Assembly (NCBI GenBank): GCA_000320545.1
Contig: ADNK01000862.1
Location: 124,001-188,000, forward strand
Origin: Bigelowiella natans CCMP2755
Taxonomy: Eukaryota; Protista; Cercozoa
DNA length: 64,000 bases
Reading direction: 5' to 3'
Position numbers and translations under genes: made by a program. Below are positions 1,568 through 24,036 of this stretch, one piece after another. Each line of letters starts with the position of its first letter. The stretch's first letter is position 1. Below the pieces are notes generated by a model that searched no databases, had not been told where the DNA came from, and saw nothing but the letters and a program-made list of their open reading frames with translations.

Positions 1568-1962
1568 ATGACACTAGTGAACGCTGGCGATCTTCTCGCT
1601 CAGGTACTGTAGTCCAGACGTTGCACTCTCTAACAGGAGGGAAACCAGGGAGGAAGAAGAGAAGATGGAACAGAATAAAGCATTCCAGTATTTGTTTGAT
1701 ACTAAAATCGACCACATGGTGATGCACAGGTTCTCGTGGAGTCGGGCGTTCGGGATGTATATGCGACGTCCCCTTCACTGTCAGTCGGTGCTATCGCAGA
1801 TGTGATGGAAAAAGCAGGGGCGACATTGTATTCGCACCTCACGCCTGGAACTTCTATCGCTGCGGCTCAAGCACGTGCAGAGTTAACTAATTCTCTAGTG
1901 GCCATCGTCCTCACCGCAGATGGTACTCGACCACCATTGCCATTGCCATGGCATCGCCGCCA

Positions 1963-1998
<36 letters not shown>

Positions 1999-3157
1999 TA
2001 GTATATAACATGAATATATCTTATATTTAGACGTAGATGCACGAACGGTTACGGCGGCTGCAACAGCAGCAGCTATGGCATCTCCGGCATCACAAAACGG
2101 AACAAGCAAGAGCGAGAAATTGGGAGGTGGTGGTAGTATCATCAGAAGAATAGGAAGAACACCAACAGGGGCAGAAGCAACAGGAGCGTCTGCATCTGGT
2201 CTGCTATTGCTGCTGCTTAGGGAAAGAGTGAAACGGAGAGGGGGGACGACGCTTGGGAGAGAAGCTGCTAGAAAAGTAGAAGAGACGGCAACAGATGGAA
2301 GTTCTCACTCCACCTCCTTCGTGGAAAAGCTTCGTAAGGAGTGTCAAGATATTGTCGTGATGGACTTTCCGGATGATAATGATAATGAAAGGCTCGGTGG
2401 GCATGGTTCTTTAGATTTCAAAGCCAACGAATCAGTGGCCTCGTCATCCTCGTCTTCGTTGTCTCACGAGGATTTTGAGCTTCTGCAACTCAGTTCTGAG
2501 GTAGTTCTTGTAAAAATATTTATGCGTTATAGGCTGTGCCAATTTACACACCCTACTCTAGATTATATTTCAGAAGGCGTCGACAAGTTTATTATATAAT
2601 AATTCTTTGTTGCTATGTTATGTTTATGTTGTCAAACAACGCAGTCGCCGCGTCTGCGAAATGTCTTAATTTTACATTTTTGTGCAGTATATTATAAATC
2701 GCGCTACAATCGCGACCAGAGCTGCCGTTACCGCTCCAGCCTCATCGGCTTCCTCTCGTAGTGGAGTTGTTCTCATCGATTTCGACCCCAAAATTCTCGC
2801 AGCTTTATGTCACCCCATCAGTAGACAAATTGGTGGGAAACGGCTACGAGGAGGAGCACATTCGTCGTCTTCGTCGTCGTCGTCTTCATCGTCGTTCCCC
2901 ACAATCACAAGCACTTCTCACACTGCTACTGTCGTCATCGTCCCTGAATCACTCGAGGCTTCCATAATCGAGCGTCTCGAAGAAGCGGTTGCAGGAAAGG
3001 GGAGAGGAGGAGTAGAAGGAAAGCACGTCTCTCCCCTGACTTCAATCATGTCTGCTGCTGTCAGTAGGGCTGCATCTAATAGCAGCCTTGTAGTAGTTCC
3101 AAACACCGGCGTCTCCTTACTAGGGTATGCGCTGGGTGCCACTGGCTACCTACTTCC

Positions 3158-3189
<32 letters not shown>

Positions 3190-4345
3190 GGCAGCATAAG
3201 GGAGTTGTGCTGTTGGCTGTTAGGAGAAGAGATATTTTCCCTACTGCCTCGACCCCGAACGATGCTGCCGATGACAGTGATACGACAAGAGAAAATTGGT
3301 CAGGCAGCAACACTTCCCTCAGTCTCGATGCGCTGCGCACTGCCGTGTCGCGACGGTGCAATTTGGTCGTAGTTGTGGTCGACAACACCGACGATAACAA
3401 AGTTAAAGCGCATGTGCAGGAAGAGAAGGAGAAGGCTGGACTGGACGAGGAACTAGTCGCCGCCGCGCTTGGAATAGGATGTTATACTCTTGAGAACGCT
3501 ACGAAGGCCATTGACTCGGCTCGCACGGGGCGACCGTGTCTATTGCTCAGCAAATCAAGTAAAACTGGCAAGAAAGTATCTGCAATCTTGGGAACGAGAG
3601 AGATCAAGGCCAGAAATGATAAAAGCATGAAGGAAACGACGCTGGAATCCCTACAGGCACTTGTTTCCGTGTGCCCCTCACCTCTATCAGCAGCCCATTC
3701 CCTCCTCGGGATCATCAAAGAGAGCTGCAATGAAAAGAGAGAAGAAAAAGAGACTAAGAGGATGAGGGAAGTGACACTGGTTACCTCCGAAGAACTGCTT
3801 CAAAACACGTATGTTTTAGAATTCATGTATAATGATGACGATGATGACGATGATGCTGATGATCATGATGGCCGATAATGATGATGGTGGTGATGATAAT
3901 CAATGTGCTTTGCGATGGCAACGTTCGCCCCCTTTCTTCTCTTGACCTTTTTCAGACGTACTGACTTAGCCCAGATGATCTTTCCTCTATAATTGATTTA
4001 TAGTAACTATTATATTATTATATGCGAAATAGGGCGGAGATTCTCCATCGTGTCTCCTCCTCCTCCTCCTCCTCCTCCTCCTCCTCCTCCTCTCGAGCTG
4101 CTGGTCCTCCACTCGTTGTGGTGTTGGACACGTTAGGGGAGAACCTTCGAAGCACATGTGGCATGATGATGGGGCGTTTTGAGGGCGGTGTTGCGCCATA
4201 CTTGGATCCATTCCGTCTCCTCTTAGGCCTCGGCATCTCAGCCATCAGGTCATCCGCAGATACAGCGCTATCAGCTGTAACATCAACGTCGCTATCGTCA
4301 TCAGCACCAGAACCACGCGCCTACATCGTGCGGGTGCCGAACACT
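1568..4345 (+). other. Degenerate ThDP-dependent enzyme-like region (acetolactate synthase family fold: Pyr domain plus two PP-like domains)
   Basis: The segments MTLVNAGDLLAQVLVESGVRDVYA, AAAQARAELTNSLVAIVLTAD and GVVLIDFDPKI match the ALS N-terminal pattern (G.DLLA..L...GV..VFG; A.GYAR.TG..GV.L.T.G; GPVLIDLPKDV). LRTAVSRRCNLVVVVVDN and GRPCLL match the PP domain. Matched by eye only. Confidence 0.65.
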
Positions 4346-5071
4346 GTGCTTACCCAGTTGTTGCGAGACTCTCTACAACAACGAGTTCCGATGAAGACGA
4401 TGACGGCAAAGGCAAAAGCACCGGTACCTGCCCCTGCTTCAGCAGGGATTTGCATCCCTCTCCCTCGACGCGGAGATACAACCTTTGCACGCGCTGAACT
4501 CGAGTCGCGGCTGTCAGCCCTGTCTTCATCATCGTCTTCATCGTCGCCGCGAAAGTACTGCGACATCAGGCATATCCTCGTGCATTTCTCAACCGAGTTT
4601 GCCAGCAAAACTGCCTTTACCATCACGCAGCCAAGCTCAGCATCGACTCCACCAACATCGTTAGCAGCGCCACAGGAAATCACCTATGGACAAGCGTCCT
4701 GGAGGATGGTTCGATTAGGCCGCTGGTTGATAAAGGCTGGGGTGGGATGCGGCGAGCGCGTTGGCGTCTTGGCGCCGAACTCCTTTCGCGTCGTCGAGGC
4801 GCATTATGCAGTGGCGGGAGTTGCTTCTGGAATCGTGCTGAACTGCAATCAGCGCCTTGCAGCCCTAGAGCTCGCCTACATTCTCAATGATGCTGCCCCA
4901 GTAATAAGAGAATAAGATGCGGGGGGGGGGGGAAGGGAGGGTTCGGAGAGTTGTAGTGGACGCTTGTATTAAAATTCGTGCTGGAAAGGGGGGTAGATGC
5001 GGTCGTAGTAGTTTATTCAAGATTGTCAACTACAATCCGGGTGTCGTACACGCAAGCACACATAAGCAAAC

Positions 5072-5109
<38 letters not shown>

Positions 5110-6843
5110 ATCTCAGGTGGTGATGATTGCGTCGACGCGATTTCGGCAGTTGCTGGTTGATGCACTTGCTCTGTCGCGGCGAGTAGCAGCAGAGACATTT
5201 GAGGAGGGAAAGAAGGAAAGGGACGACCACACAGTAGACTCGATCGCGCCCGTCGTGGATATTCTGAAAGCAATAATCTGGATCGATGAAGACGCAGGCG
5301 CCGTCGTAGGGACGGCCAGTCCACAGCTAGAAGCCAAGGATGGCCAGGAATGCAACGTAAAAGAGGATGATCATGTTATCATCAACATCGATGCTGGCGA
5401 GGGCAATGGTGCGGACTCAACCACGCGAAAGAGAAGTATTCGCCAATTTTACTACGAGGCTATTGCCGGTGGGGGTGCAATCTCTTCTCCTTCAACCTCC
5501 TCCTCCTCCTCCTCCTCTTCCACGGCGTCCTCTATCATCCCTCTCCTGCCAGAGAGATCGAGGAGTGTGGGCTCGGATCAGGGCGAAAGCGGGTGTGAGA
5601 TGTACTACACGAGTGGAACGACCGGAAGGCCTAAGGGTGTTGTGCTGAGCCATAAGAACGTCGTCCTGCACGCACTTGGGTGCATGGTCGAGCACAGGAT
5701 CCACTCGGATGACGTATGGGCGCACATCGCACCGATGTTCCACCTCGTAGACGCATACGGTATGTTCGCAGTCGCCTGGGTGGGGGGGCGGCACGTATTC
5801 CTCGCAGACTTCTCGCCTGCTTCGGCACTACGATTGATCGAGCTGCAGCGTGTGACTGTGACTAACATGGCAAGCACAATGATCAACATGCTACTTACGG
5901 ATCCGTCGCGCCCATCGCGCGACCTTTCCAGTCTGCAGCTGCTCTCCGGCGGTGGCGCCCCTATCAACCAAGACACGATGAAGCGCGCGTTGGGAGCGTT
6001 CGGGTGCGAATTCTTCCTGAGTTACGGCATGACGGAGTGCTGCGGCAAGATCTCCATGTCGCTGCTCCAGACGGCGAAGGACGAGGATCCGCAGACTGGG
6101 CACATGAACTCGGAGATCAGGCGACTGTCGCAACAAGAGCAGCTTGCATATGTGTGCACATCGGGCCGACCCTTCTCCTTGCTGGAGGTCAGGGTGGTGC
6201 CGGTCATTGCACCCAGCGGTGAATCTGCCGCTGCTGCTGCTGCTGCTGGTGGTGGTGGTAGTAGTACTAAGGCTGCTGTTGTGAGTGTGCCATGGGATGG
6301 GAAAACGGTCGGTGAGGTGCAGATTCGAGGAGAAACAGTGTTCCGAGGCTACTGGCGTCGCCCGGCAGCGACACGTAAAAGCTTCGTTGATGATTCCAAT
6401 GGGGAGAAGAAGGGGGGCGGGCTTGCCTGGTTCAAGACGGGAGATCTCGCATTCGTAGAGCCTCGTGGATACCTAACCATATGCGACAGAGCGAAGGACA
6501 TGATCCTCACAGGCAGCGAGAATGTCTACTCTGTTGAGGTCGAGCGCGTATTGCAGGACCACCGTGGCGTTCGCCACGCGTGCGTCTTCGGCGAACCGAA
6601 CGAGCTGCTTGGTGAGATCGTCAAGGCCGTTGTTGTGCGGTACGATGGCCCTTTGGGAACTCCTGTAAGCGCTGCTGAATTAAGGCGTCACTGCGTGGCG
6701 CGCCTTGCCGACTACAAGGTTCCAAGAAGGATCGAATTTGTCGACGCACTACCGATGACGGGTAGCGTGTTTCTACGTGGTGAATGACGGTGGAGACAGT
6801 GATGATGATAAGGAGTTTTTAAGAATGAGGCCTTTCTCTCTAT

Positions 6844-6883
<40 letters not shown>

Positions 6884-6899
6884 GTGCGTGCGCGCGCGC

Positions 6900-6930
<31 letters not shown>

Positions 6931-7830
6931 CACCCGCGCCCATCAACGTCTTTGCCAATATATAGCTACAGTCATAACTACCATCTTGCTCCGTCCTCAT
7001 CCTCTTAGGTTCCGGCAAAATCGCCAAAGCAGAGGTCAGGCGCCGCGACCAGGAGCGGCGTCGTGCGAGAGAGGAGAAGAAGGCTAAAAGGAGGGGAGAG
7101 CAGCAACTGCAGGCGCGGACGAGTGGTAGCGGTGCTGTTGATGATGACGGCCAACATCGACAGCCACCTGCAATGGTACAGGACATATACCGAATCACCT
7201 GGACGCAGTCAAGCAGCAGCAAACAAACGCGGAATAATAATACGAACCATAGTGATGAAAGATGGCTTGTTCTGTCCTCTGTTGCTGCTGCTGCCTCTTC
7301 CTCTTCATCTAGTGGCAGAGATCATGATGGTAGTGTGGCTACTGCCCTCTGCGAAAGAGTACGTGCTAGCGGCGGCAAGGTCAAACGGGTCACGGTGCCA
7401 ACGACAACGATGATCACCGACACTGACCAACTCCTACGTCGAATCGTTAATGGCAATAATGATAATAATGATGATGATGATGATGGCAGTGGGGTTGAGC
7501 TGACGGCCTTGACACATGTTGCCTTTCTTCTGCCCCTCGACGATGAAGCAGCTACAGCAGCTGCTTTTGCTGGGAAAGAGGATGAAAAGTCGCCTTCGTT
7601 TTGCAGCTCGGTTGCTGAACGCGTGCGAAAGTTATTAGGAACGCTTCTAGCTTTACTAAATGTCCTACATTCGAAAAAATCGAAGAGGCAGGAGGCAAAG
7701 GCTGGGTTGAGGCTGCTAGTCGTCACGCGCGGCGGTCCCTTCCAGATTAATGACAACGGGGAAACGGAAAAGCACGACTCTATTCCAGGTAATAGGAGAT
7801 GGACGGGATGAGAATGGACGATCATGCGCG

Positions 7831-7896
<66 letters not shown>

Positions 7897-10065
7897 ATCA
7901 TTTGTTCTGTTTCCCTGCCTGACCGATCTCCCTCCACCACTGTGTTGGTACTACCGCCACATCTTCAAGATCCCGTGAGCTCGGCAGTCCTGGGGTTCAC
8001 ACGTGTGGTAGCGGCTGAATATCCACGGCTCGAAGCATGCTTCATTGATCTCTGCCCCGGAGAAACCGACCATGCCCGAGATGCCGCCACTCTCCTCCAA
8101 GAGGCGAGACTCTCATCTTCTCCATCATCATCGTCCTCGTTCGATCGTTCCACTGCTGAGGTTACATACCGACGCCGACGCCGCTACTTGCCATCCCTCC
8201 AGCGATTCCCAAAGGGCGCGCTCACCAAGCCCGCCACAAGAGGTAGCACTAAGGGCGGTGCCTTGCTGTTAAGCATAACCGCAGAAGAGGAGCAGGAAGG
8301 CGGGTGCTGCTACTTGGTGACCGGAGGGCTAGGGGGGCTAGGCCGCCACCTTGTGTCGCGTATGTGCGGGCAGTGGGGCGCAAAACGCGTCATACTGCTC
8401 GGCCGTCGAGAACCAAGTAAGTCGCGGGGTAGTAGCGTTATCGGTCTTCAGTACACGTTGGAAATAATTCGATCAGAGAGAGTTGGGAAAGAGGAGGAGG
8501 AGGAGGATGAGGAGGAGGAAGAAGAGGGGGGATTTTCTCTGTGTCCCTGTCTAGCTGTTTATATTTGTGCATCTCGTCTCTATCGTTGGCAGCATATTTA
8601 GAAATACATTTCTCACTCCTCCTCCATGGGTGTTGTTTTCCTACTATTATGAGCCAATATGTTCGTGCTGATACAATGCTGCATTGACTCAATTTTCCAG
8701 GCGAGGAGGCATGCTTATGGATGAAGACCGTAGAGCAGGCGACTAGTGCGAAGTTGGTGGCGTGGCGGTGCGACGTGTCTAAAGCAAGCGAGTGTATAAG
8801 TGTGCTACAGAGAGCAAAGCGTGAGGTCGGGGCTTGCCGGGGCATCTTCCACCTCGCAGGAGTGGTAGGGGATGGGACGATCGATTCCATGAGCTGGGAG
8901 ACGTTTGACCGAGTGATATCTGCAAAGGTAGATGTTTTGTTGTCATGCTGATGGTAGTGATGGCGGTGGCTGTGTGGGTGGGAGGGAGCAGCTGATGCAA
9001 TGATTTACCTCGCTTGCTCGTTCCTGCCTCTCCTCCTTTTCCCTCTCCTTCTGCTCCTTCAGGTTGATGGCTCCTTGCACCTCCACGCGGCTGCGATGGA
9101 GACTGGAGCACCCCTGAAACACTTTGTTTTATTCTCTTCGATCTACGGGCTGCTAGGATACAGGGAGCTCAGCCATTATGCAGCAGCAAATGCCTTTCAA
9201 GATGGCCTTGCTGCGTATCGCCGTGCCCAAGGATTACCTGCACTCGCAGTGAGCTGGGGGACGTGGGCAGGGGCAGGCATGGCGCATCGGTTCGGCTCTG
9301 GATTCGAGGCGTAAGTCACATTATACAAACACAAAAAGAGAGAAATCGGGGAGGGGGGGAGTGGGAGGTGGAAGGAAGCGCAGAACAAGTAGAGCAGCAA
9401 GGAGTGTTTGACAAAAGAAGCAAGTAGCACGTTGAATGCCGCTAGTTGCTAAGTTCTCCGTAAAGGGTGTTCGTGAAGGACAATGATGACGTTATTCGCG
9501 ATGATGATCAGGTACTGGCGCGGCCTGGGAATGGGATTTGTCCCTCTGGATGGCGGCATGGAGGCACTTGGGTCGCTGATGCAGCTAGCCAGTAGTAGTC
9601 ACACCGGTGATACTGCTACTATTACTGCATCATCAACGCCCGTGCAACCACATATCTCCCACGGCGCTGTAATCCCAACTGAATGGAAGCGATACGCAAA
9701 GACACGACGGGGAGTGCCCCATCCCCTAGCAAAGCGGATGGTGGATGAGACTCTACGCGAAGAACAGCAGCTGCCGCAGCAGAAACAGCTTCCTCCCCTA
9801 ATCGCAGCTCTCGCGTCGGCGTTGGCGTCGACCGGGAAGGACGATAGAAAGTCCCGGCTTATGATAGTAGCCGCGCATGTGGCGAGAACTGCCACTATGG
9901 TTCTTGGAGACGACGAGGAGGACGGCGGCGAATTGGAGGACCTCGATGGGTAGCATCATTAGTAGTAGTAACGGCATATAGTAGGGGAACAAAGGCAACA
10001 GTTCGTGAGTTTTCCAATTAAACGCATGGTGCGATAGAATCCCTCATTTTCTTCCCCTTACTTCT

Positions 10066-10105
<40 letters not shown>

Positions 10106-10697
10106 TCTCTCCCCCCCCCCCCTCCTCTCATTCGCTTCTTTCCAGGAACGTTCCCGTGGCAGAGATTGGGCTGACATCAATTCTGGTCGTAGAGCTCTCG
10201 TCTCGCCTCACAGATGATACCTCCCTCGAGGTACCGGCCACCCTCATCTATGAGGGGGTTACGATAAACGGCGTCGCAAAGCTGCTTCTCGACCTCATTC
10301 CAGAAGAGCTCATCGCGTCATCTGCATCCTCCTTGTCATCTACTTCACCGTCCTCCTCCTCCTCCTCCTCCTCCTCCTCCTCCTCCTCCTCTCCCTCGCC
10401 TCTCGTCCAACAGCTGTGTGTCATCGAACCGGCCAGGCGCGAGGCAGTATTGCTCGCTGCGATTACGGAGATTGCCGCGGAGACAACCGACCAGGAAGTC
10501 GATGATATCGACACGACAGTTGCAGTTGCTGAGATCGGCCTTTCTTCCATGGGTAATGGTGCGTGTGTGGTCATATTTCTGGGTATGACCCCTCTTTTTG
10601 CAAGATTCTGCGAAGAAGCAAAAATAGAGAAGGGGGAAGGTCGCAGTGAGAGATGTTGCTTTTTGATTGGGCACTGTCACACTTACAAACACACTCA

Positions 10698-10734
<37 letters not shown>

Positions 10735-11177: not shown

Positions 11178-11229
<52 letters not shown>

Positions 11230-12859: not shown

Positions 12860-12905
<46 letters not shown>

Positions 12906-15353
12906 CCAAATGTTAAACGTGTAATTTTATTCGCTCTTCATTACCCAGCTACCCATCGAAATCTCGCGCTTATCATCGTCATCATCTTTGTTGTCTTCTC
13001 TTTTTTCATTTCTCGTAATCATCACATAGCTTGTTCCATGGGAGCCGCTTGGTCTCTCCCTGTGCTCTGAGGAGACGCGATTAAGTGACGATGATGGCGC
13101 TGATAAGAACGAGAGTAATGGCGATGGAATTAACGGGAGCCTTGAAGGAGGAAGAAGAAGAAGTCCTGTTATAATCGGTGTTAGTGGCTTTGGATTCGGC
13201 GGTACCAACTCGCACGTCCTTATCCAGCAGCCACCACAACGCAAGGTCATCAGTAGCAGTACCGAAACAAAGCAGCGGAGATGGCGCCTGCAGCAACGGC
13301 GGCAAGAGCATCGCGACGGTCCTCCTTTACCCTTCCTCTTCTGTCTCGCCTCTCACTCGTCGGATGCCCTCATGGCTACCGCCACTGGTCTACTAATGTA
13401 CGTAAACAGCCAGCTAGAAACCAGAAGAGGCGGAAAGGAAAACGATAGTTTGGTTGAGGAGTACGAGGAGGTTCCAGTATCAGCTCTCGCAGTCGCGAAG
13501 TCCCTGGCTCTCTTGCGGTCGCATTCACGGCGCCTGCGTCCTTTCCGCGCCACCTGCATCGCCTCGTCCCTCGACGATCTCGCACATAGTCTGGAGACTC
13601 TCATCGCAGCTACTGCTGCTGCGAATGGAAAGTGTGCCGTGAAGAGAAAGGCAGGGACAGGATCTGCAGCACTTGCTGCCAAAACGGCTGTCAGCAGCCC
13701 CGTTCAGGAGCGCGTGCTGCATTCTCGACCTCGCATCGTGTTTCTGTTCACAGGTCGTCTAGAGCTTAATGCCATGCTTACGATTAGAGTGTCGCTCTTA
13801 ACAACAACGACAATGATGATGTTGATGATGATGACGATAATGACTAGTGTAGAAGCTGATGATAATGCGTGATATTCGCTCTGCGTCCATCTATCCAACA
13901 TCAGGCCAAGGTTCCCAGTATGCTGGGATGGGGTCCTCCTTGTACCGACGGTCGTCAGTGTTCCGACACGAGTTTGACCTCATCGACAAAGCGCTCATGG
14001 AGACGCCTGGATGGCAAGGCTACCAAGGCGAGCGCAGCCTGGCAAATCTTCTCCACTTCTCCCCCCCCTCCAACACCAAAAGTGGCAACGAAGATAGCGA
14101 CGCTGCTGCTACTGCCGCGGAGATCATGTTCCAAGATGCATCTGTGCTGCAGCCGGTGATGTTTGCTCTTGAATACGCGCTTGCCTCTTGGTTCGTTGCG
14201 CACGGAATCAGGCCCCAGGCCACCCTGGGTCACAGCTTAGGTGAGATAGCGGCCTTTTGTGCTGCCGGGAGCCTCACGCTCCAAGACGCGTGCCTTCTAG
14301 CTGTGGGCCGTGGAAAGGCAATGAAATCTCTGGTAAGCGGCAATGACGGCCAAGGCCGTGGCGGGATGGTAGCCGTTCGTGCTTCGGAGAGCGATGTTAA
14401 AGAGGTGCTCAATGCAAGCGGATTTTCTGGTCTTGTGATCGCCGCCGTGAATTCCCCCCTCGGAGTTGTCGTCTCTGGCGAAATAGCGCAGATAGAGCGC
14501 GCGGTCCGCGTGTTCAAACAGGAGAAGAAGTGGAAGGCCAAGCAGCTGGATGTGAGTGTCGCATTTTCCATCATCGTTCACCCTTTCGTAGCAGTGATGA
14601 AAGAGTGTGTAGCTCTGAAATGAGAGCTTAGCTGTAGATGATATTGATGATGAAGATGATGCCAAAAGAGAACAACAACACAACAGCAAAAGAAAAGTAG
14701 GACACGATCGTCATGCTCATACATTACTAATGGCGCTGATGCGAGTCCTCTGTCATTCTCAACTGTCCTTTTGAAACCTTTTTTCACACTCGAGTCTTCT
14801 CTGTTTTTGAACCGACACACCTTCTGCACCGTTGGCTGTGTACTTACATCTATGTAGGTATCAGCTGCCTTCCACTCGCCTCTGGTCTCCCCATGCCTGG
14901 CGTCTTTGCGGAAGGCTGCCGAGAAAGTGAAAATCCTCCCTCCCCATCACGGCATCCGCCTGCTATCTAGCGTGGATGGCAAGGAGGTAAAGGGAGGGGA
15001 GGATGCAGCAGAATACTTTGTGCGACAGGCAAGGAGTCCTGTGCGGTTCATGGAGGCACTGACTGCGAGCAAATGCAACGTGACGTTAGAGATTGGCCCC
15101 CAGCCACACCTCTCCGTCCATGCGGAGCCTGTGTTCGCCTCACATGGTGACGTGAAAAAGCAGGAAAAGAAGACCAAGACCAAGAATTCTAGGCAACGTG
15201 GCCGCATGTTTAATGTAATTCGCACTCTGCGCAAAGGAAAGGACGATATCAATCAGATCTTCCAGGTAATAGTCATGGGAGGGGGGGGGGAGCAGATTTG
15301 ATGTCATCCTCGTCGTCAGTCGATAGAACAAGTTACAAACAGCATATCTAACA

Positions 15354-15397
<44 letters not shown>

Positions 15398-16388: not shown

Positions 16389-16425
<37 letters not shown>

Positions 16426-18678
16426 GAAGAAGAAAGAGGTAGGCGAAGGCCTTGTCTCCTCAACATTTGGACCTCTATTCTTCCTACTAAAGGCTCTACA
16501 ATTGCGCCGCGAATCCTCGCGGCCAAAGCACCTCATCGTGGTTACGTTCGGTGCACACGCTACTCTCTTCGAGGAGCAGCGATCGCCATCGTCATTATCG
16601 CAATCGTCTTCCCCTTCGTTCTTCTCAACAATCTCCGGCTCGATTCTGCAGGGCTTGTGCCGATCCTCACGCATGGAGTTCAGGGGGAGTCTGAGCATCC
16701 GACTCATCGATCTTCCTGCATCAGCAACGACGCCAACAGCAGCGGTGTCGTCATCGGTGGCGATAAGAGCAGCAAATCGAGTTGCTACGGAGGTGTTTGA
16801 CGTGGTCCGTCTCGGTGGAACTGATGATGCTGCTGCTGGCATTCCTGACGTGGACGTGCTGTACCTTCCCGCAGTGCAGGAGGGGGGGGAGACGGCAGGT
16901 AGCAGCAGCACCAATGCCAGTGACAGCAATACCCATGGTAGAGAGATGGGTATGAGGCGCTTTGTGCGCCGTCTAGAGGCCGTGGGTCGTGCCCACGATT
17001 CTGCCATTCCTCGCCATCTTGGCCGCCGTTTCGATGCATCGCCATCATTGCCGTTTCCATTGTCTCCCTCTCCCCGTGGTCATGTGAATGATGGAGTTAA
17101 GCGCAGCACATACGCGATCACGGGCGGGACTGGAGCATTAGGCCTCGTGATGGCTTCATGGCTGCTAAGACGAGGAGCACGGCAAGTCTTGCTGCTCTCG
17201 CGATCTGGCAAGGTCCATGACTCCAACGCGCACCTCTACGCCGCTGCAGAAGCCCTCGTGAGGAAGCAGCAGCAAGAGGAGGAGGAGGAGGAGAGGGTGG
17301 ATCGGACGGAAATGAAGGACGCAAAGGAGGGCGGTGCCGTACCGCCAAGATCAACAACAATAGGAGGGCGGTTGAGTATAGTGAAGTGCGACGTGAGTGA
17401 TAGGAAGGAGGTGTTCCGATTCGTTCGGCGTGTGAGAGTCAACCTCGCAGGGGTCATCCACTGCGCTGGCGTGCTCGACGACGGGCTGCTCCAAAACCTG
17501 ACTATCGACCGAGCGCACAAGGTCCTGGTCCCTAAGGCCGTTGGCGCGCAATGGCTGCACGAAGCAGTGCTGAAGTATATCGAAGAAGCAAAAGAGGGGG
17601 GGGGGCATCGTCGTCAGCGGTTGAAGATGTTTATGCTATTCTCATCCGTGACGAGTTTGATGGGCAATGCTGGCCAGGCAAATTACGCCGCAGCCAATGC
17701 GTTCCTGGACGGTCTAGCACGACACAGAAGGAGGTTAGGACTGAGGGCTCTCAGCGTGCAATGGGGGCCCTGGGCAGACGTTGGGATGGCAGTCGCTACT
17801 GTGGTAGTAGTCATTACACTAGTAAAACTTGCAAAATATCAAGAAGAGCAAGTCAATACATATTCGTGAAAATATGAATCCCCCTCTCCTCCCCTCCCTT
17901 CCTCCCTACCTCCCTCCCTCCCTTGCGCTCTCCTCTCTGTGGACCCAAGTGTGGGTGTGCAAACAGCCGCAGAGTTGTCCAAACAAACTTCTTCATGGTC
18001 ATCATCATCAGCAGCAGCAGCAGCATTTTTCACTAATCAAACCCCGTATTTTTTTTGTCTTGGTTGTCCTTAGCTGGCCAATACGCGTAGCCAAAGCAAG
18101 TCGCTCTACGTGGCCATGACGCCTCCGCAGTGCCTTGCACCTCTTGACGGCCTCCTTCTTATGGAGAACGAAGACTTCGCAGCGGGAGGAGGAGGAGGAG
18201 GAGGAGGAGGAGGAGGGGGGGGGGGGGGGGAGGGGGAGGAGGAGGCGAAGGATAGCAGATTCTACGTCGATTACGCTGTTGTAGCAATCTGTAGATTCCA
18301 GCAGCAGCCCTACTCCTCCTCCCCCCTCCCTCGACTATTCAGCCGCATGCCTTACTATCGGTCCTTCCTCGCTCGCTCGCTGCCCTCTGCTGCTGCGACT
18401 GTGGAGATGGCAACAACACAGGCACAGCAACACCGTCGTCATCAGCACACTGCCACCACAACTAGATTGCTTCCTGTCGTGAATGAGAAGGAGGGGGCGA
18501 TCGAAGGGATGGAGAAGAAGGGTAACGTGGTAGTAAATGGAGGTGCTACGAGCCGCGATAACGTTGCACGAGAATGTATAGCAATTCTCGCGGAATTTGT
18601 CAGTGACGGGATTTCACTTTCCGAAGATACGGAGCTCATGGACCTGGGCATTGACTCCCTTGATTGGACCGAGGTCAT

Positions 18679-18720
<42 letters not shown>

Positions 18721-19365
18721 ACACCACCGTGTCATCGATATCCATAGCATGCGTGCGCGTCCTCATCATTCTCATTCTGCCTCCATATTTCTACCAACAC
18801 TACTCAGGTTTTGGGCCAGGTGAACCGTCGAATGCAAGTGCACGCAATGCCCACGTTGGTCCTAGAGATAACCGTTGTACGCGACCTTATCGAGTGGGTG
18901 GCGGGGCAGCATGTCCAAAATCACCAGAGCGTCTCCACTACTACGAAGAATGCTAAGAGCTATGATGACATTACGAGGCCGATGCAGATGGGACCTTCCC
19001 AGCTACTCGTCAAACAGTCCAATAATGGAGCATTCAGCAGCAACGTCGCTGCTACCACTACCACCACGTCGCCCTTTTCCTCTCCATCATCAGCCACTGT
19101 AATGAGAGGATTCGAGAGACTCTCTCCGATGTCTGCTCAAAGGAGGGAGGAGGAGACGAAGAGGAAGAGCATCAATCTCAAAGATATCACACTCGGTGTC
19201 ATCGATGTGGTAGTTTCTGGTGGCTTTGGGGAGCAAGCAGACATCGTAGACGTAAAGGAGGAGACAGACCTCAACGAGCTTGGGATCGATTCGCTGGACT
19301 TTGTTGAGTAATCCTCGCCCATCACCACACACACATAATATTGATATATACATGTATTATATATT

Positions 19366-19429
<64 letters not shown>

Positions 19430-21922
19430 GCTGGCATGCTATCTCGTTTAAAGTAACGTCAACGTCCTCTCTAGCATCATCACTATCAGCGCCATCATCA
19501 TTATCACCACCGTTGTTGATGCTGAGCATGAAAACTATGCAATGTATGCCCAGGCTGCTCCGAGCGGTGGGTACGCGATTTGGCGTGGACGCTCCTCCTA
19601 CGCTCGTTCTTGAGGTTCAGTCGGTCGGGCAGCTCGCAGCTTACGTGCATGGGCAGTTGACGGAAGGAGAGATAAGTGGTAGGGAGGACGACGAAGAGAT
19701 TGGAGAAGGGGACCGCCTCCACGAGTCCTCGCACAACAACTCTGCTTACGACTCAAAGGCGGCAACGTCAATGCATCAATCACTACTTGGTCGGGATGAT
19801 GGGAAGCAGCAGCCCCTGTCCTCTTTTTCCTCGAAGCCGGTTTCTCCTGAGCAGAGGAGAGCGCTGCAGCTCGAGCACGAGTTGAACGTAGTCATGATGC
19901 CCCAGGGTGTCACCCAGATGGCGGTCAATATTCTAGGCTCGCTCCTACGTCTGAGCGTGTATGCAGCAGGCTTTGTACCCATCGTCCTCATCGAGGAGAG
20001 AACGCACTTTTTCTCGGAAAGGTTTTCAGAATAATGATGATGGCGATGATGGTGGTGGTGATAATAACGATGATGGTGATGGTGATGATGATGATGATGA
20101 TGGTTGCTTGCTCTTGGGCGATACGAACACTAAAGGTATAAACCATATGCGACAGAGTTGTTAGGAGATCAGGAAAACGAAGAGAAAAACCTAACGATAT
20201 TGTCAATCTTCATTGATGTTAAAAATCTTCTTCTGCTACAGGTATAATAGGGTAGAGGCACGCTCTGCATTGGAGCTTGCCGTGTGGTTCAGCGGAATGC
20301 TAACGCTCTGGACAGCGTGCTCCATGATCGCGCTCATAATTTTCAAGTGGCTTATCGTGGGCAGATATCGAGAGGGGAACTTCCACAGGTACAGCTGACA
20401 AAAAGGAGCAGAGTATCGAGCATATTCTCTCGTTGCCGTCCTTACGGCGGTAGCAACCGTGTCGTAGTAGTCAAAGATTTGGAATGTTAAGAAATGTGAC
20501 GATAATGATGATGATTATTTATTTACTTAATTACTTACTTGCTAGGTGGTCATGGGAAGGTGCGAGATACGGGCTGTATGACCTTGTAGGGGGGCTGGAC
20601 GGGCCTATTGGCTGGGTCTTCAACTCGCTTCCAGACCCCATTCAGAGAACGTATGTTGAGCGACAACAAACAACAACAGCAAAAAAAAAAACAATAATGA
20701 GATCAAGAAGAAGAAGAAGAAGAAGAAGAAGAAGAAAGTGGGATCCAAAAGAGAATAACACTACGATGTCGCTAGTATATCGCCAACTATAGTTACATGC
20801 CATTATTCAACTCAACTCCTCCTTCCTCTCCTCCGTACTCCTCCCTCTCCTACTACTACCACTACTACTACTATCACTACTACTACTTCCGATTACAATC
20901 CCCTTTGCAACCCCCGCAGGTATTTTCGAGCGCTAGGGGCAACCATAGGCTCGGATGTGACGCTGCACGGGGAGATCACCACCGGTTATGACCTGATCAA
21001 AATAGGCAATGGAGCTGTCATCGAGTCCGGCTCATCGCTGAACCCAAGTAATTACTTAACTGAAATAAAATCTCATCGTTCGCCACCATCATCAATAGCA
21101 ATATCAGCATCAGCATCAGCACCAGCATCATCAACCTAACAGATGGTTTCCCCAACACCAGGCGTAACGGAGGACGGCGTTTTCGTGCAATACGCGCGCA
21201 TAACCGTGGGTGCGGAGAGCTTGGTAGCAATCCGATCAAGGGTCGGCCCAGGCGCGTGCCTCGGCCAACGCGCAATGCTCGCACCCTATGCCTTTGCCCA
21301 GGGCTACGTGCCACCACTCTGCGTTGTCACCGGGGAGAATTCCTACCTCAAGAAGCCCAATAGTCCTGGCTACAAACGCGTGCCTCAGAGCGCGCTTGCA
21401 TTCCCCAGAGGCGGTGTTACGATGTTCTGCCTGGAGGCGGTTGCGTTCATATACCTCGCCTTTTGTAGCGGACTGTGCATTATGTCCGGCTTCCTTGTGC
21501 GCGCCGCGGTTGCAAAGGCGATCTGGGAGGGCATTGACAAAGATGGCGAGGAAGACGGAGGGGGGGGGGTGATTAAGTGGGACTTCTGGTCTATCACGAT
21601 GGTTCTCACGATTGCACTTCTAGGAGCCATGCAGGCCTGTGTTTTCCCAGTCGCGCTCATCAACAAGTATCTCTTCACTGGCCGCGTCCGAGCGGGCCGA
21701 CGAGCACTCACGCAGCTTTTGTGCGTGCGCCACAAGGTTGCAGGCCGCTTGATCGCGCTCGGTGATATGATCTTGCTGGCCTACTTTGAATCGACACCTG
21801 TGCAAACCGTCTGGTAGTAGATTGAACATCAACTCGTTAACGCAAGCATGACTATAGTTTCTTCCTCAATATCTCATTGGCAATAATGACATCTATCACG
21901 CACGATTCCATCTGTCCACACA

Positions 21923-21976
<54 letters not shown>

Positions 21977-24036
21977 ATCTCCCCTAACTTAAGAAAAAGG
22001 AGCCTCCTGTCTCTGTATGCTTGAATGCACTGCTGTTCCAATAATATGATTACGATAAATGAAGGTACTGGCTCCTGGGTGCCAACTTAAAGATGTCGTC
22101 GATCGTGAGCTCGTGGGACGGCGTGCAAATCGCTCCGGATCTTCTTACCGTAGGCCGCGACGCATACATAGGCAACGCGCCCTATATCGGGTTTGTAACA
22201 GTGCACAAAGAGAGAATGGAGGTGAGCTTTGACCCTATCGTCGTAGAGGAGAAAGTCTTTGTTGGGCCGTTCTCCCATCTTGCCGCCGGCACGCATATCC
22301 AACGCACGGGCGCGGTCTCAGCGATGGCGATCCTCAAGCGTAACGAAAACGTTCGGAGCTTTACGACAAGGGTTGGCTATAGGGCAAGCGTATCATACCG
22401 GCCGGAGGGCATCTACGCCCCGATGACGCTCTATACGTTCATCCTTGTCTCTCTCAGCTCGCTTCACATGTGCATGGAACTAGGTGCCGTCGGGCTCCTC
22501 TTCGCAGCCGTAGAGTACGTGCTCTTCAACCCGGAGAAGCTAGGCCTGCCCAAGTACGGCGCCAGTAATAGTGTCGTGAGAAACCACGGCGAGTGGATCA
22601 TGATGATGACAGCTGTCGTCCTGGCGGTCCTTAGTGTGCTCTCCTTGCTCATCTCCATCGTGTATATTTTCATTGCTTTGGCTGTGAAATGGCTGACGAT
22701 GGGTCGCGTCGATCCCGAGCGCAAATACCCTTTGCGAGGCAGATACCACGCGATGTGGGTATTCAATCTCCACCTGATGTACCGGGTTAACGGCATCCTG
22801 GGCGCGCTCAAGGAGACTGGCATCGTGTCATACGTGTATCGATGGTATGGGGCACGTGTGGGTCGCAACGTGAGATTCTCCGGGCTCGGCTCTTTATTCC
22901 CAGAGGCTGATATCTACGACATCGGTGACGGCGCGTTCATTGGATGCGCCGCGTATGGGCATAACTTCCTGAGAGGGCACCTTCGATTTGAGCCCATCGA
23001 GATAGGGAAAGGCTGCAGGCTAGTGCGCTCCGGGACACAGGTCGTTCCTGGTGTTCGACTGACAGAAAATATCGATATCGGACCAGGCCTCAATCTTATC
23101 CTTCCTGGCCGTTATGACTCGCCTGGAATGAAGCTCATTGGCATCCCAGGCCGACCATGCGTACGCGAGCAAAGACGGCGCAAACAGCGCCCAGGAGGGG
23201 GAAATAGGGAGAGCGAGGATTTTGACAATATTAAAGAGATAAAGAGAGCCGATACCCTCTCTGGAGAGCAGAAAGGAACGAAAGAGAGTGCAATCCCCCG
23301 AGCCTGGGTACGTAAGGACTTTCTACAATCAGCTGCTAATCATGAACAAGGGGAGAACTTCATTAACACGAGTTTTAATCCGGAGCTTTACGACGACGCG
23401 CTGCTTCTTGGCGCTGCATCACCAGAGGCATCCTCTACCACTCTCTATTGGAGGAAGAAGAAAAAAGGACAGGGATTCTGGAACTCAATCCGATTTGGCA
23501 TCTTCAGCAACAATGAGGAGGAGGTGGTGGATAGCGGCAGTTACTATGCACTCAATGATGGGGGGGGAGCACAAAATGGTAAAGACACCACGATTCATAT
23601 CAAGCCCAAGAAGAATGACGGCCAAAATATCGTAAATAGCGGACGCAGTAGCAAGGATTACAGTTCACAACAAGATATAGTTGATGAGGTTGACTTCGGA
23701 GAAGAAGACATAGAATCCCTCTATAACGTTGTTACCTCCGGTAAGGGTAGCATAAATGGTAGTAGTGATGACAATCATGGCTATCTTGGTAGCAAGAGTT
23801 ACTCCATGAAGGGTCGCCACGCCTCCAATTTTTCCGTCCTCCACGAAGACGATAACAACGATGAGATGCAGGGTAAAGAGCCGAAGGAAACAAAAAATAA
23901 CGTCGGAGGTTTAGTCAGCTATTTCTGGCGGGGCGAAAGCAACAATAAGAATCGGAATAAAGCCATCAAACGCAAGATGAAGCTGGACCCGGACATGACT
24001 CGTGGACTTCTGGATAGCAGTACCACTGATAAATAG
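1568..24036 (+). CDS. Giant hybrid synthase: ThDP-like pseudo-domains, A, KR, ACP, ACP, KS, AT, KR, ACP, ACP, Pls-like transmembrane/beta-helix terminal region (about 5,600 aa, 28 exons)
   Basis: Manual exon model: 1568-1603, 1730-1922, 2031-2500, 2688-3808, 4033-4900, 5117-6761, 7009-7788, 7970-8416, 8701-8927, 9063-9310, 9512-9949, 10146-10552, 10747-11170, 11438-12516, 12633-12715, 13030-13753, 13905-14551, 14858-15265, 15414-15959, 16277-17791, 18074-18673, 18808-19307, 19554-20021, 20242-20388, 20546-20650, 20920-21047, 21162-21813, 22065-24036. All junctions are GT-AG and phase-matched (total 16878 nt, divisible by 3). Several junctions rebuild conserved motifs: LPMTG|SGKI, FTG|QGSQ, LD|VSAAFHS, ECAAG|IAGLIK, GIDSLDFVE|LL. 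Confidence 0.88.
4560..7040 (+). other. Adenylation domain, acyl-CoA synthetase type (ANL superfamily)
   Basis: Motifs YTSGTTGRPKG, APMFH, YGMTE, GEVQIRG, FKTGD, RAKDMILTGSENVY, and LPMTGSGKI with the catalytic Lys across an intron. Confidence 0.95.
7173..9700 (+). other. Ketoreductase 1 (structural plus catalytic subdomains), directly after the A domain
   Basis: Motifs IYRITW, VLGFTRVVAAEYP, YLVTGGLGGLG, HLAGVVGDG, FSSIYGLLGYRELSHYAAAN and VSWGTW. Confidence 0.92.
9850..10880 (+). other. Tandem carrier domains ACP1 and ACP2
   Basis: VAEIGLTSILVVEL...VPATLIYE and VAEIGLSSMGVVDL...VAPTLIYE. The phosphopantetheine Ser is present in non-canonical GLTS and GLSS motifs. Confidence 0.85.
11025..13230 (+). 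other. Type I PKS ketosynthase with intact Cys-His-His triad
   Basis: Motifs IAISGISCRLPG, MDPQQRLLLE, DTACSSSL, EAHGTGT.LGDPIE, KSNIGHLE and GVSGFGFGGTNSHV. Confidence 0.97.
13730..15440 (+). other. cis-acyltransferase, probably malonyl-CoA specific
   Basis: Motifs FTGQGSQY, GHSLGE, AAVNSP, VSAAFHS (xAFH type), PVRF and LEIGP. Confidence 0.92.
15710..18380 (+). other. Ketoreductase 2 (B-type LDD fingerprint)
   Basis: Motifs VFQCTW, GLCRSSRMEF, ITGGTGALG, HCAGVLDDG, GNAGQANYAAAN and QWGPW. No DH or ER motifs were seen between AT and KR. Confidence 0.93.
18550..19665 (+). other. Tandem carrier domains ACP3 and ACP4
   Basis: LMDLGIDSLDWTE|VLG...MPTLVLE and LNELGIDSLDFVE|LLR...PPTLVLE. Confidence 0.92.
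19900..23160 (+). other. Pls-type NRPS terminal region: three repeats of [TM pair + KW..GR motif + hexapeptide left-handed beta-helix]
   Basis: KWLIVGRYREGNFHRWSW, KYLFTGRVRAG and KWLTMGRVDPERKYPLRG each follow hydrophobic helices. They are followed by RALGATIG, WLLGANLK and RWYGARVG and by hexapeptide runs (IKIGNGAVI, LTVGRDAYI, YDIGDGAFI, IEIGKGC). Confidence 0.85.

What the first reader, a model, noticed from the sequence alone, without database searches (positions are those of the whole stretch)
1568..24036. One-gene assembly line: ThDP-like, A, KR, ACP2, KS, AT, KR, ACP2 fused to a poly-lysine-synthetase-type membrane terminus
Seen: 28 phase-consistent exons join into one protein of about 5,600 aa with intact A, KS, AT, KR and ACP catalytic motifs and no TE, C, DH or ER domain. 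Known: Streptomyces Pls is an A-T didomain plus a TM/beta-helix region that polymerises the carrier-bound monomer, and type I PKS modules normally release by TE or reductase. Inference: this enzyme builds a hydroxy-acyl monomer (reduced starter, one malonyl extension, beta-ketoreduction) and passes it to a membrane condensation unit. The product could be a polyester/oligomer or an acylated membrane or extracellular acceptor. I do not recognise this full architecture from any characterised enzyme. It is the best candidate for an undescribed system in the window.
Basis: partly seen in the sequence, partly recalled or inferred. Interest (0 to 1): 0.95.

Follow-up and report, generated by a model that had tools for sequence, protein, structure and literature searches.

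The report
Polyketide synthase fused to polylysine-type terminus
A marine alga (Bigelowiella natans) carries one giant, expressed gene that joins a polyketide-building module to the membrane "polymerase" end so far known only from bacterial and fungal poly-lysine-type enzymes. The same layout is conserved but uncharacterised in several unrelated groups of marine protists.

Summary
Window 1568-24036 (+) encodes one multi-exon gene of Bigelowiella natans, about 30 exons and 5,700 aa.

Its order is: degenerate ThDP-enzyme-like N-terminus, acyl-AMP ligase, KR, two ACPs, KS, AT, KR, two ACPs, then a Pls/PosA-type terminus and a low-complexity tail. The terminus has six TM helices in three pairs alternating with three left-handed beta-helix segments. 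No TE, C, DH or ER domain was found.

Spliced RNA contigs from three studies remove seven GT..AG introns and join the last ACPs to the membrane terminus.

- The "A" domain is an acyl-CoA-ligase-type enzyme, not an amino-acid adenylation domain.
- The ThDP part is only weakly detectable here and seems to have lost its cofactor motifs.

The architecture is not unique. Collinear orthologues occur in diplonemids, a dinoflagellate, a pelagophyte and a prasinophyte. Three uninterrupted ORFs have an intact acetolactate-synthase-like ThDP domain. All are unnamed, and I found no paper describing them.

Most likely the enzyme makes a hydroxyacyl-ACP that the terminal beta-helix domain off-loads by acyl transfer. 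Iterative polyester formation is possible but untested.

Verdict: a new variant of a known kind, interest 0.75. JGI's annotation splits the locus.

The parts
1568..4520 (+). N-terminal ThDP-enzyme-like region, degenerate. Exons about 1568-1603, 1730-1922, 2031-2500, 2688-3808 and the start of 4033-4900. It ends at the family-conserved 'FARAEL' linker at 4484.
   Evidence: The first four exons equal JGI model Bigna1 132093 (P0188). Pfam TPP_enzyme_N is the top hit on residues 5-88 at E 8.8e-4, below the cut-off. Atlas structural neighbours are all ThDP enzymes, TM 0.44-0.53. hhalign of ten orthologue ThDP regions against 4034-4666 gives E 0.0011. Orthologues carry TPP_N/M/C at this position. 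BLASTP, HMM searches and AF2 gave nothing.
4667..7035 (+). Acyl-AMP/acyl-CoA-ligase-type loading domain (ANL superfamily). A3 motif at 5609. A10 Lys lies just after intron 6762-7008.
   Evidence: Pfam AMP-binding E 6e-44 and AMP-binding_C E 9e-18. PDB best hits are feruloyl-CoA synthetase, FadD8 and MatB. Motifs. It is 52-57% identical to orthologues.
7912..9752 (+). KR1, ketoreductase after the ligase. NADPH motif at 8320, YAAAN at 9177. Intron corrected to 8928-9062.
   Evidence: Pfam KR, tblastn to orthologue KR1, motifs.
9850..10880 (+). Tandem carrier domains ACP1a (GLTSI, Ser about 10177) and ACP1b (GLSSM, Ser about 10546). Introns 9950-10145 and 10553-10746. The second half of ACP1b shares exon 10747-11170 with the KS N-terminus.
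   Evidence: Pfam PP-binding. Junctions were chosen by register between the two repeats.
11031..12718 (+). Ketosynthase. Cys at 11895, HGTGT at 12369, NIGH at 12489.
   Evidence: Pfam ketoacyl-synt E 1e-51 and Ketoacyl-synt_C E 1.5e-27. Motifs. It is 46-51% identical to orthologues.
13171..15163 (+). KS-AT linker and acyltransferase. GHSLGE at 14228, AAFHS at 14864, which is malonyl-type.
   Evidence: Pfam KAsynt_C_assoc and Acyl_transf_1, E 3e-34. Motifs.
16466..17779 (+). KR2, structural plus catalytic subdomains. NADPH motif at 17120, LDD at 17468 (B-type), YAAAN at 17684.
   Evidence: Pfam KR E 2.8e-51, full length. Motifs. The share of sampled words in RNA runs fits this exon being expressed.
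18560..19650 (+). Tandem carrier domains ACP2a (GIDSL, Ser 18656) and ACP2b (GIDSL, Ser 19291), each split by an RNA-confirmed intron (18674-18807 and 19308-19553).
   Evidence: Pfam PP-binding, motifs, spliced contigs.
19930..23170 (+). Pls/PosA-type terminal domain. TM1 19930-19986, TM2 20288-20362, C1 beta-helix, TM3 21425-21511, TM4 21605-21661, C2 beta-helix, TM5 22471-22527, TM6 22618-22674, C3 beta-helix with conserved His at 22960-22962.
   Evidence: TIGR02353 hits. Hydropathy. Alignment with Pls/PosA proteins. AF2 pLDDT 83.7, and Foldseek returns only beta-helix acyltransferase-fold proteins. Introns 20022-20241, 20389-20545, 20651-20919, 21048-21161 and 21814-22064 are removed in RNA.
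23171..24036 (+). Low-complexity hydrophilic C-terminal tail of about 290 aa, and stop codon TAG at 24034-24036.
   Evidence: Translation. It is not conserved in most orthologues. It is covered by RNA contigs and 3' reads.

Best explanation
This is a single expressed nuclear gene of Bigelowiella natans for a membrane-anchored megasynthase of about 5,700 aa. It belongs to a conserved, uncharacterised protist family.

Shown:
- The domain order is ThDP-like (degenerate here), acyl ligase, KR, ACP-ACP, KS, AT, KR, ACP-ACP, then a Pls/PosA-type terminus.
- All catalytic motifs of the ligase, KS, AT, KRs and ACPs are intact.
- There is no TE, C, DH or ER domain.
- The terminus has three TM hairpins, so all three beta-helix segments lie on the ACP (cytosolic) side.
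- A His, an Asp and the KW motifs shared with bacterial Pls/PosA proteins are conserved.

Inferred mechanism:
1. The ligase adenylates a carboxylic acid and loads it on ACP1. In orthologues with an intact acetolactate-synthase-like domain this is probably an acetohydroxy or keto acid made in line.
2. KR1 reduces its keto group.
3. KS condenses it with AT-loaded malonyl-ACP2.
4. KR2 (LDD, B-type) gives a D-3-hydroxyacyl-S-ACP that carries at least one further hydroxyl.
5. The pseudo-trimeric beta-helix domain releases it by acyl transfer to an O or N nucleophile at the membrane. This resembles how LpxA and LpxD use 3-hydroxyacyl-ACP and how Pls uses lysyl-S-T.

Odds for what accepts the acyl group:
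- iterative transfer to the hydroxyl of another monomer, giving an oligo- or polyester: about 0.35
- a single transfer to a separate acceptor such as a lipid, sugar or amine: about 0.35
- hydrolysis or lactonisation: the rest

Confidence is about 0.9 for one gene with this architecture and 0.55 for the whole statement including acyl-transfer release.
For: - Domain hits and motifs.
- Spliced contigs in three studies join ACP2 to the terminus.
- The share of sampled words, 0.76, is close to the exonic fraction of about 0.78 that I computed for 16200-24100.
- The second half of ACP1b and the KS N-terminus lie on one exon. The ThDP-like tail and the ligase N-terminus also lie on one exon.
- Collinear single-ORF orthologues exist: P0009 (5,021 aa), P0151 (6,114 aa), an Artemidia Trinity ORF (4,400 aa), Diplonema (4,912 aa) and Polarella (4,999 aa). 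Further members come from Hemistasia, Cymbomonas and Chrysophaeum.
- The terminus has six TM helices in three pairs and three soluble segments. Its AF2 model (pLDDT 83.7) matches only left-handed beta-helix proteins, mostly acyltransferases.
- K208/W209, D282, H299 and F301 are invariant or nearly so across PKS-linked and classical Pls/PosA termini.
- The PosA paper describes the same topology and a pseudo-trimeric beta-helix model (PMC10522769).
- The orthologue ThDP domain is acetolactate-synthase-like, E 2.5e-40.
Against: - No RNA junction was examined upstream of 18256, so a single transcript over the whole 22.5 kb is inferred, not seen.
- TIGR02353 scores (33-59 bits per exon here, 61-149 bits in intact orthologues) are far below the curated 423-bit cut-off. 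The terminus is therefore a divergent relative, and its activity may differ from polymerisation.
- No substrate, product or acceptor is known for any member.
- The ThDP-like region of this gene is statistically marginal and probably inactive, so the proposed in-line starter supply cannot apply here.
- Several internal exon boundaries in my model are uncertain, for example 7688-7788 and 15932-16022.
Confidence: 0.55

Rival explanations
1. The terminal domain is mainly a membrane anchor or scaffold with no catalytic role. The product would leave by spontaneous lactonisation, by hydrolysis, or through a trans-acting thioesterase or acyltransferase encoded elsewhere.
For: Scores to TIGR02353 are far below the cut-off. 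A 3,4-dihydroxyacyl thioester could lactonise without an enzyme (own chemical knowledge). Some orthologues carry an extra AT-like domain after the terminus that might act in release.
Against: The His, Asp and KW positions shared with active Pls/PosA enzymes are conserved across very distant protists. The whole ~730-aa module is kept in every full-length family member. In Pls this domain is required for product formation (PMC10522769).
Confidence: 0.15
2. The locus holds two or more separate genes, for example a ThDP-like protein, a ligase-KR-ACP protein and a KS-AT-KR-ACP-Pls protein, as the public JGI annotation implies.
For: The JGI model Bigna1 132093 stops at 3875 after reading into the intron. 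A 647-aa protein identical to the ORF of the last exon is held in EukProt and MetaClust. There is no RNA junction evidence upstream of 18256.
Against: Gaps between coding blocks are 57-314 nt and all are bounded by GT..AG. Domain halves are split across the proposed gene borders: the PP-domain tail with the ligase on exon 5, the ligase A10 Lys across 6761/7009, and ACP1b with KS on one exon. Orthologues are uninterrupted single ORFs.
Confidence: 0.06
3. The enzyme is a true Pls-like poly(amino acid) synthetase. The terminus would polymerise an amino-bearing monomer through amide bonds, and the PKS part would only build an unusual beta- or gamma-amino acid.
For: All characterised Pls/PosA enzymes make amide-linked cationic homopolymers (PMC10522769).
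Against: There is no aminotransferase or amino-acid-type adenylation domain. The ligase is acyl-CoA-ligase-like. Two KRs and no transaminase predict hydroxyl, not amino, nucleophiles.
Confidence: 0.05

Closest known systems
Epsilon-poly-L-lysine synthetase Pls (Streptomyces albulus) and delta-poly-L-ornithine synthetase PosA (Acinetobacter baumannii): the Pls/PosA family, TIGR02353
   Same: A C-terminal module of about 730 aa with six TM helices in three pairs and three beta-helix segments of about 180 aa. It sits directly after a carrier domain that presents a thioester. The KW, Asp and His positions are shared. There is no TE or C domain.
   Different: Known members are A-T-terminus proteins of about 1,300 aa that load a diamino acid and form amide bonds. 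Here a ThDP-like domain, an acyl ligase and a complete KS-AT-KR module with tandem ACPs feed the terminus. The donor should be a hydroxyacyl chain, and the score is far below the family cut-off.
LpxA and LpxD: trimeric left-handed beta-helix acyltransferases that use (R)-3-hydroxyacyl-ACP
   Same: The beta-helix fold, a carrier-protein-bound 3-hydroxyacyl donor, and a catalytic His at a beta-helix interface. This is my own knowledge of those enzymes. The model also matched LpxD and other beta-helix acyltransferases.
   Different: They are soluble homotrimers that act once on a UDP-sugar. Here three non-identical repeats in one chain are tied to a TM bundle and fused to the synthase.
Type I modular PKS modules with a CoA-ligase-type loading domain
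   Same: Ligase-ACP loading, then KS-AT-KR-ACP with canonical motifs.
   Different: There is a KR directly after the ligase, doubled ACPs at both positions, an N-terminal ThDP-enzyme-like domain and a Pls-type terminus in place of a TE or reductase.
BurA-like NRPS/PKS of dinoflagellates (TE-A-T-KS-AT-TE-KR-T), also noted in this genome at another locus
   Same: A one-module hybrid megasynthase that is widespread in marine protists.
   Different: BurA-like genes have N-terminal and internal TE domains and no ThDP or Pls-type domain (PMC5725682). The other type I KS locus of this genome is on contig C908.
PhaC polyhydroxyalkanoate synthases (functional analogue only)
   Same: If the polyester reading is right, both would polymerise 3-hydroxyacyl thioesters.
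   Different: The fold is unrelated (alpha/beta hydrolase), the substrates are CoA thioesters and the product is an intracellular granule. No sequence relation is claimed.

Membership tests
Pls/PosA family terminal domain (TIGR02353) | Six TM helices in three pairs separating three soluble segments of about 180 aa | tested here: met
   Hydropathy on the RNA-confirmed splice chain gives TM pairs at 19930-20362, 21425-21661 and 22471-22674, with soluble blocks between and after them. The topology is as described for Pls/PosA (PMC10522769).
Pls/PosA family terminal domain (TIGR02353) | Score above the curated NCBIfam cut-off (423.1 bits) | tested here: not met
   The last exon scores 58.6 bits (profile 110-429) and exon piece 20759-21136 scores 32.9 bits. 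These were searched exon by exon, so the full score is not obtainable. Intact orthologue termini reach only 61-149 bits.
Pls/PosA family terminal domain (TIGR02353) | Soluble segments fold as left-handed beta-helices | tested here: met
   The AF2 model of 22066-23262 has pLDDT 83.7 and pTM 0.80, with beta-helix, two long helices, then beta-helix. Foldseek PDB hits are all beta-helix proteins. C1 was not modelled.
Pls/PosA family terminal domain (TIGR02353) | Architecture A(amino acid)-T-terminus, producing a homopoly(amino acid) | tested here: not met
   A KS-AT-KR-ACP-ACP module lies directly upstream. The only adenylating domain is acyl-CoA-ligase-like and lies about 3,600 residues upstream of the terminus. 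The product is not testable here.
Type I PKS module | KS Cys-His-His, AT GHSxG with Arg, KR NADPH and Tyr motifs, ACP serine | tested here: met
   DTACSS, HGTGT and NIGH in KS. GHSLGE, VGRG and AAFHS in AT. TGGTGALG, LDD and YAAAN in KR2. GIDSL twice in the ACPs.
Type I PKS module | Canonical release domain (TE, reductase or C) | tested here: not met
   No Pfam hit or motif in any + strand open piece of 70 aa or more.
ThDP-dependent enzyme (acetolactate-synthase-like) | TPP_enzyme_N, M and C domains above the Pfam thresholds | tested here: not met
   Only TPP_enzyme_N was detected, at 19.5 bits against a cut-off of 26.8 (E 8.8e-4). M and C were not detected. Orthologue P0009 has all three at E 1e-25 to 1e-31.
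ThDP-dependent enzyme (acetolactate-synthase-like) | Catalytic Glu of the Pyr domain and the GDG...N diphosphate/Mg motif | tested here: inconclusive
   In low-confidence alignments the Glu position reads T-S-P, and the GDG position, across junction 3808/4033, reads T-S-E. The flanking PP-domain alignment is marginal at E 0.0011. This suggests loss but does not prove it.
BurA-like NRPS/PKS | N-terminal and internal thioesterase domains (TE-A-T-KS-AT-TE-KR-T) | tested here: not met
   No TE was found anywhere in the locus. The architecture is as given in PMC5725682.
NRPS amino-acid adenylation domain | Closest relatives are NRPS A domains | tested here: not met
   The top 30 or more PDB relatives are acyl-, aryl- and malonyl-CoA ligases (E 4e-51 to 1e-28). 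NRPS A domains appear only at about E 7e-20.

The most novel reading that the evidence does not exclude
This protist family is a new kind of membrane-embedded polyester synthase, unrelated to PhaC. A one-module PKS makes di- or trihydroxyacyl-ACP monomers from a ThDP-derived acetohydroxy-acid starter. A Pls-type pseudo-trimeric beta-helix/TM domain joins them through ester bonds and extrudes the oligo- or polymer. This would be an undescribed biopolymer made by diplonemids, dinoflagellates, pelagophytes, prasinophytes and chlorarachniophytes.
Probability: 0.3. Interest if true: 0.9.

Novelty: new variant of a known kind. Interest (0 to 1): 0.75.

Why it matters
Pls/PosA-type termini are so far known only as polymerases for cationic amino acids, and their mechanism is unsolved. 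A conserved eukaryotic family in which the same module is fed by a polyketide module has several consequences:

- It widens the chemistry this membrane domain can be expected to perform, to ester formation or acylation of membrane or extracellular acceptors.
- It supplies a natural set of divergent sequences for finding the domain's catalytic residues.
- It points to an unknown metabolite or polymer made by ecologically important marine protists. These include diplonemids, among the most abundant heterotrophic flagellates of the ocean, and Diplonema papillatum is, to my knowledge, genetically tractable.
- It corrects public annotation. The Bigelowiella locus is split into fragments, and a 2015 survey of algal genomes listed no type I PKS for this species (PMC4661987).

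Tried and rejected
1. BLASTP of exon 2670-3875 against the Diplonema and P0009 N-termini gave nothing. hhalign and hmmsearch of orthologue ThDP profiles against the N-terminal exons and P0188 were not significant. Only the exon-5 tail matched (E 0.004, then 0.0011).
2. AF2 of P0188:1-606 with an orthologue alignment failed (pLDDT 37), so no fold search was run on it.
3. The first Atlas call on exon 4 alone gave no usable hit.
4. A PDB sequence search of the terminus found no solved relative.
The taxonomic origin of those two metagenomic ORFs is therefore unknown.
6. BurA-like identity is rejected because there are no TE domains.
7. An amino-acid NRPS A domain is rejected.
8. My first dynamic-programming gene model contained wrong or doubtful exons. 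6830-6901 is spurious. The starts at 8985 and 10038 and the end at 10582 were corrected. 7688-7788 and 15932-16022 are still doubtful.
9. A weak FAD_binding_6 hit between the two last ACPs is taken as chance, because it is a partial match with no NAD-binding partner.
10. The terminal-domain tree was only the quick version, with modest support (SH-aLRT 81-88). I do not rest any origin claim on it.
Exons were searched one by one by reference. Joined translations were made only inside scripts, for frame checks, hydropathy and motif coordinates.

Full report
**Observation**

The + strand of 1568-24036 is a chain of open blocks separated by short gaps, typical of an intron-rich eukaryotic gene.

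Pfam and NCBIfam scans of every stop-free piece, each given by reference, placed the following domains:
- an AMP-binding enzyme with its C-terminal subdomain (4667-6766)
- a KR (8308-9269)
- carrier domains (about 10150 and 10540)
- KS (11031-12542)
- the KS-AT linker, then AT (13898-15163)
- a complete KR (17105-17779)
- two more carrier domains (about 18650 and 19290)
- two matches to TIGR02353, the Pls/PosA terminal domain (E 2e-8 and 3.7e-16), in the last exons

No thioesterase, condensation, dehydratase or enoylreductase family or motif appeared. The catalytic motifs are intact: ligase A3, A5, A7 and A8; KS Cys-His-His; AT GHSLGE, Arg and AAFHS; both KR NADPH and YAAAN motifs; and four carrier serines.

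**Gene model and expression**

A simple splice-aware dynamic programme was corrected by hand where repeats or motifs fix the register. It gives 30 GT..AG-bounded exons and about 5,690 aa, from ATG 1568 to TAG 24034-24036.

Laying three transcriptome-sized runs from three different studies on 18100-24099 showed contigs that skip exactly seven GT..AG introns: 18674-18807, 19308-19553, 20022-20241, 20389-20545, 20651-20919, 21048-21161 and 21814-22064. Single 4.5-kb contigs run from 18256 past the stop codon. This joins the last two ACPs to the membrane terminus on one RNA. The contigs end in the poly-Gly repeat at 18100-18255, so they say nothing about contiguity further upstream.

Those runs hold 0.76 of the sampled words of 16200-24100. 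That is close to the exonic fraction of about 0.78, so the KR2 exon is expressed too (the fraction is my arithmetic from the model).

Upstream contiguity rests on three kinds of sequence evidence:
- The ligase A10 lysine is restored only by junction 6761/7009.
- The second half of ACP1b and the KS N-terminus share exon 10747-11170.
- Exon 4033-4900 carries both the tail of the ThDP-like domain with a family-specific 'FARAEL' linker and the start of the ligase.

**Organism and annotation**

A protein identical to the first four exons is JGI model Bigna1 132093. The genome is therefore Bigelowiella natans, as earlier notes of this scan said.

That model reads into the intron after 3808 and stops. 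A 647-aa protein identical to the ORF of the last exon is also held in EukProt and MetaClust. The public annotation therefore splits the locus. A 2015 survey listed no type I PKS for this alga (PMC4661987).

**The family**

An exhaustive HMMER search with the last exon found 629 proteins at E up to 0.001. The best long ones carry the match at their C-terminal end:
- Diplonema papillatum 'EryA1' (4,912 aa)
- an Artemidia motanka transcript ORF (4,400 aa)
- a 5,021-aa metagenomic ORF

Further searches added proteins from these sources, all named 'hypothetical' or left unnamed:
- Polarella glacialis (4,999 aa)
- a 6,114-aa ORF
- Hemistasia
- Cymbomonas tetramitiformis
- Chrysophaeum taylorii
- several assembled contigs

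Pfam gives them the same order: TPP_enzyme_N/M/C, AMP-binding, KR, PP, KS, AT, KR, several PP, then hexapeptide. All eight C-terminal regions tested match TIGR02353 at E 1e-17 to 1e-43, well below the 423-bit cut-off.

Five orthologues tested by tblastn align collinearly with the window from 4559 to beyond 23100. Identity is 48-57% in the ligase and 43-51% in KS.

Other long Pls-like hits are ordinary A-T-terminus proteins with add-ons. In a quick tree the window's terminus sits among the PKS-linked ones and not with a B. natans paralogue, but support is modest.

**The three unusual parts**

1. *Ligase.* Its solved relatives are feruloyl-CoA, fatty-acyl-CoA and malonyl-CoA synthetases (E 4e-51 to 1e-37). 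NRPS A domains come far behind. It is a carboxylic-acid loader.

2. *ThDP-like region.* In P0009, P0151 and P0152 it is a full acetolactate-synthase-like enzyme (PDB 6lpi, E 2.5e-40) with the NEE and GDG motifs. P0009 also has an extra Pyr domain. In the window the evidence is weak but consistent in position:
   - TPP_enzyme_N is the top Pfam hit on residues 5-88 (E 8.8e-4, sub-threshold).
   - All Atlas feature and structure neighbours are ThDP enzymes (scores 0.80-0.85, TM 0.44-0.53).
   - The PP-domain tail aligns at E 0.0011.
   - By low-confidence alignment the catalytic Glu and the GDG motif are replaced.

   I read it as a degenerate, probably inactive domain.

3. *Terminus.* On the RNA-confirmed splice chain there are six hydrophobic helices in three pairs. 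Three soluble blocks alternate with them, followed by a low-complexity tail of about 290 aa.
   - An AF2 model of the part on the last exon is confident (pLDDT 83.7). It shows beta-helix, a helical hairpin, then beta-helix.
   - Foldseek returns only left-handed beta-helix proteins: serine, galactoside and sugar N-acetyltransferases, LpxD and gamma-carbonic anhydrases.
   - The KW motif after TM6, an Asp and a His (22960-22962) are invariant or nearly so across PKS-linked and classical members.
   - This is the topology and predicted fold described for Pls and PosA, for which no experimental structure exists (PMC10522769).

**Mechanism**

The domain order and the intact motifs are shown. The chemistry is inferred:
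1. The ligase loads an acid on ACP1.
2. KR1 reduces a keto group. An acetohydroxy acid such as acetolactate would be a beta-keto thioester once loaded. That would explain a PKS-type KR directly after the ligase, and the acetolactate-synthase-like domain in orthologues.
3. KS, with a malonyl-type AT, adds two carbons.
4. KR2 (LDD) leaves a D-3-hydroxyl.

With no DH, ER or TE, the hydroxyacyl-S-ACP must be taken by the terminal domain. Because TM helices come in pairs, all beta-helix blocks face the ACP side.

Beta-helix acyltransferases commonly use thioester donors. LpxA and LpxD use 3-hydroxyacyl-ACP (own knowledge). Acyl transfer to an O or N nucleophile is therefore the most economical reading.

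Whether the acceptor is another monomer (polyester) or a different molecule cannot be decided. Doubled ACPs suggest high flux, by analogy with PUFA synthases (own knowledge). I put about 0.35 on each, and the rest on hydrolysis or lactonisation.

**Novelty**

Paper searches used Pls/PosA terms, the TIGR02353 name, Bigelowiella, Diplonema, Chrysophaeum and dinoflagellate PKS terms. They found no description of a PKS-Pls fusion.
- The dinoflagellate BurA-like hybrid has a different layout with two TE domains.
- The Chrysophaeum genome paper notes non-canonical PKSs with N-terminal adenylation-like domains but no such terminus.
- The PosA paper's network was limited to proteins of 1,100-1,800 aa.

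The library searched is not the whole literature. I class the finding as a new variant of a known kind. It is real, conserved and uncharacterised.

**Limits**

- Several internal exon borders are approximate.

Noticed in passing
G000 contigs C3248 (L009 4207-8682, - strand), C230 (L011 2576-9118, - strand), C1602 (L010), C2848 (L012): The B. natans genome has four more loci with Pls/PosA-type terminal domains. At C3248 and C230 an AMP-binding domain lies just upstream, which is the classical A-T-terminus type. Type I KS domains occur only at this locus, at C908 and weakly at C1130.
   Followed up: partly
window 1568-3875 and 22093-24036: The public JGI annotation splits the gene. Model Bigna1 132093 (629 aa) covers the first four exons and reads into the intron after 3808. 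A separate 647-aa protein identical to the last-exon ORF is held in EukProt and MetaClust.
   Followed up: yes
orthologues P0151 (5678-5923), P0206 (about 3700-4040), P0187/P0017 (1035-1346): Some family members carry an additional acyltransferase (AT) domain after the Pls-type terminus. A 1,363-aa MMETSP protein consists of a Pls-type terminus followed by an AT. The window's gene has a low-complexity tail there instead.
   Followed up: no
orthologue P0009 residues 35-195 and 415-600: The intact ThDP module of P0009 has two Pyr (TPP_enzyme_N) domains, with an insert of about 200 aa, before the M and PP domains. This is unusual for acetolactate-synthase-like enzymes.
   Followed up: no
window 18853-19050: A weak Pfam FAD_binding_6 match (22.7 bits, E 1.3e-4) lies in the linker between ACP2a and ACP2b. 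It is partial, has no NAD-binding partner, and is probably chance.
   Followed up: no
window 29028 to about 41000 (+) and 46824-48221 (+): The downstream neighbours are a very large CFAP54-like (cilia/flagella-associated protein 54) gene and a DEAD-box helicase. There is no obvious functional link and no biosynthetic cluster.
   Followed up: partly
window 18100-18255; introns near 10040-10140 and 10700-10745: A (GGN)n poly-Gly coding repeat is where all RNA contigs break. CT and CA dinucleotide microsatellites inside introns translate as SLSL and THTH runs, and they mislead ORF-based exon calling.
   Followed up: partly
window 23300-24099: The raw-read RNA run X21 covers only the last ~800 bases, with all first mates on the + strand and 60-nt reads. 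This looks like a 3'-tag library, so it cannot test upstream splicing.
   Followed up: no
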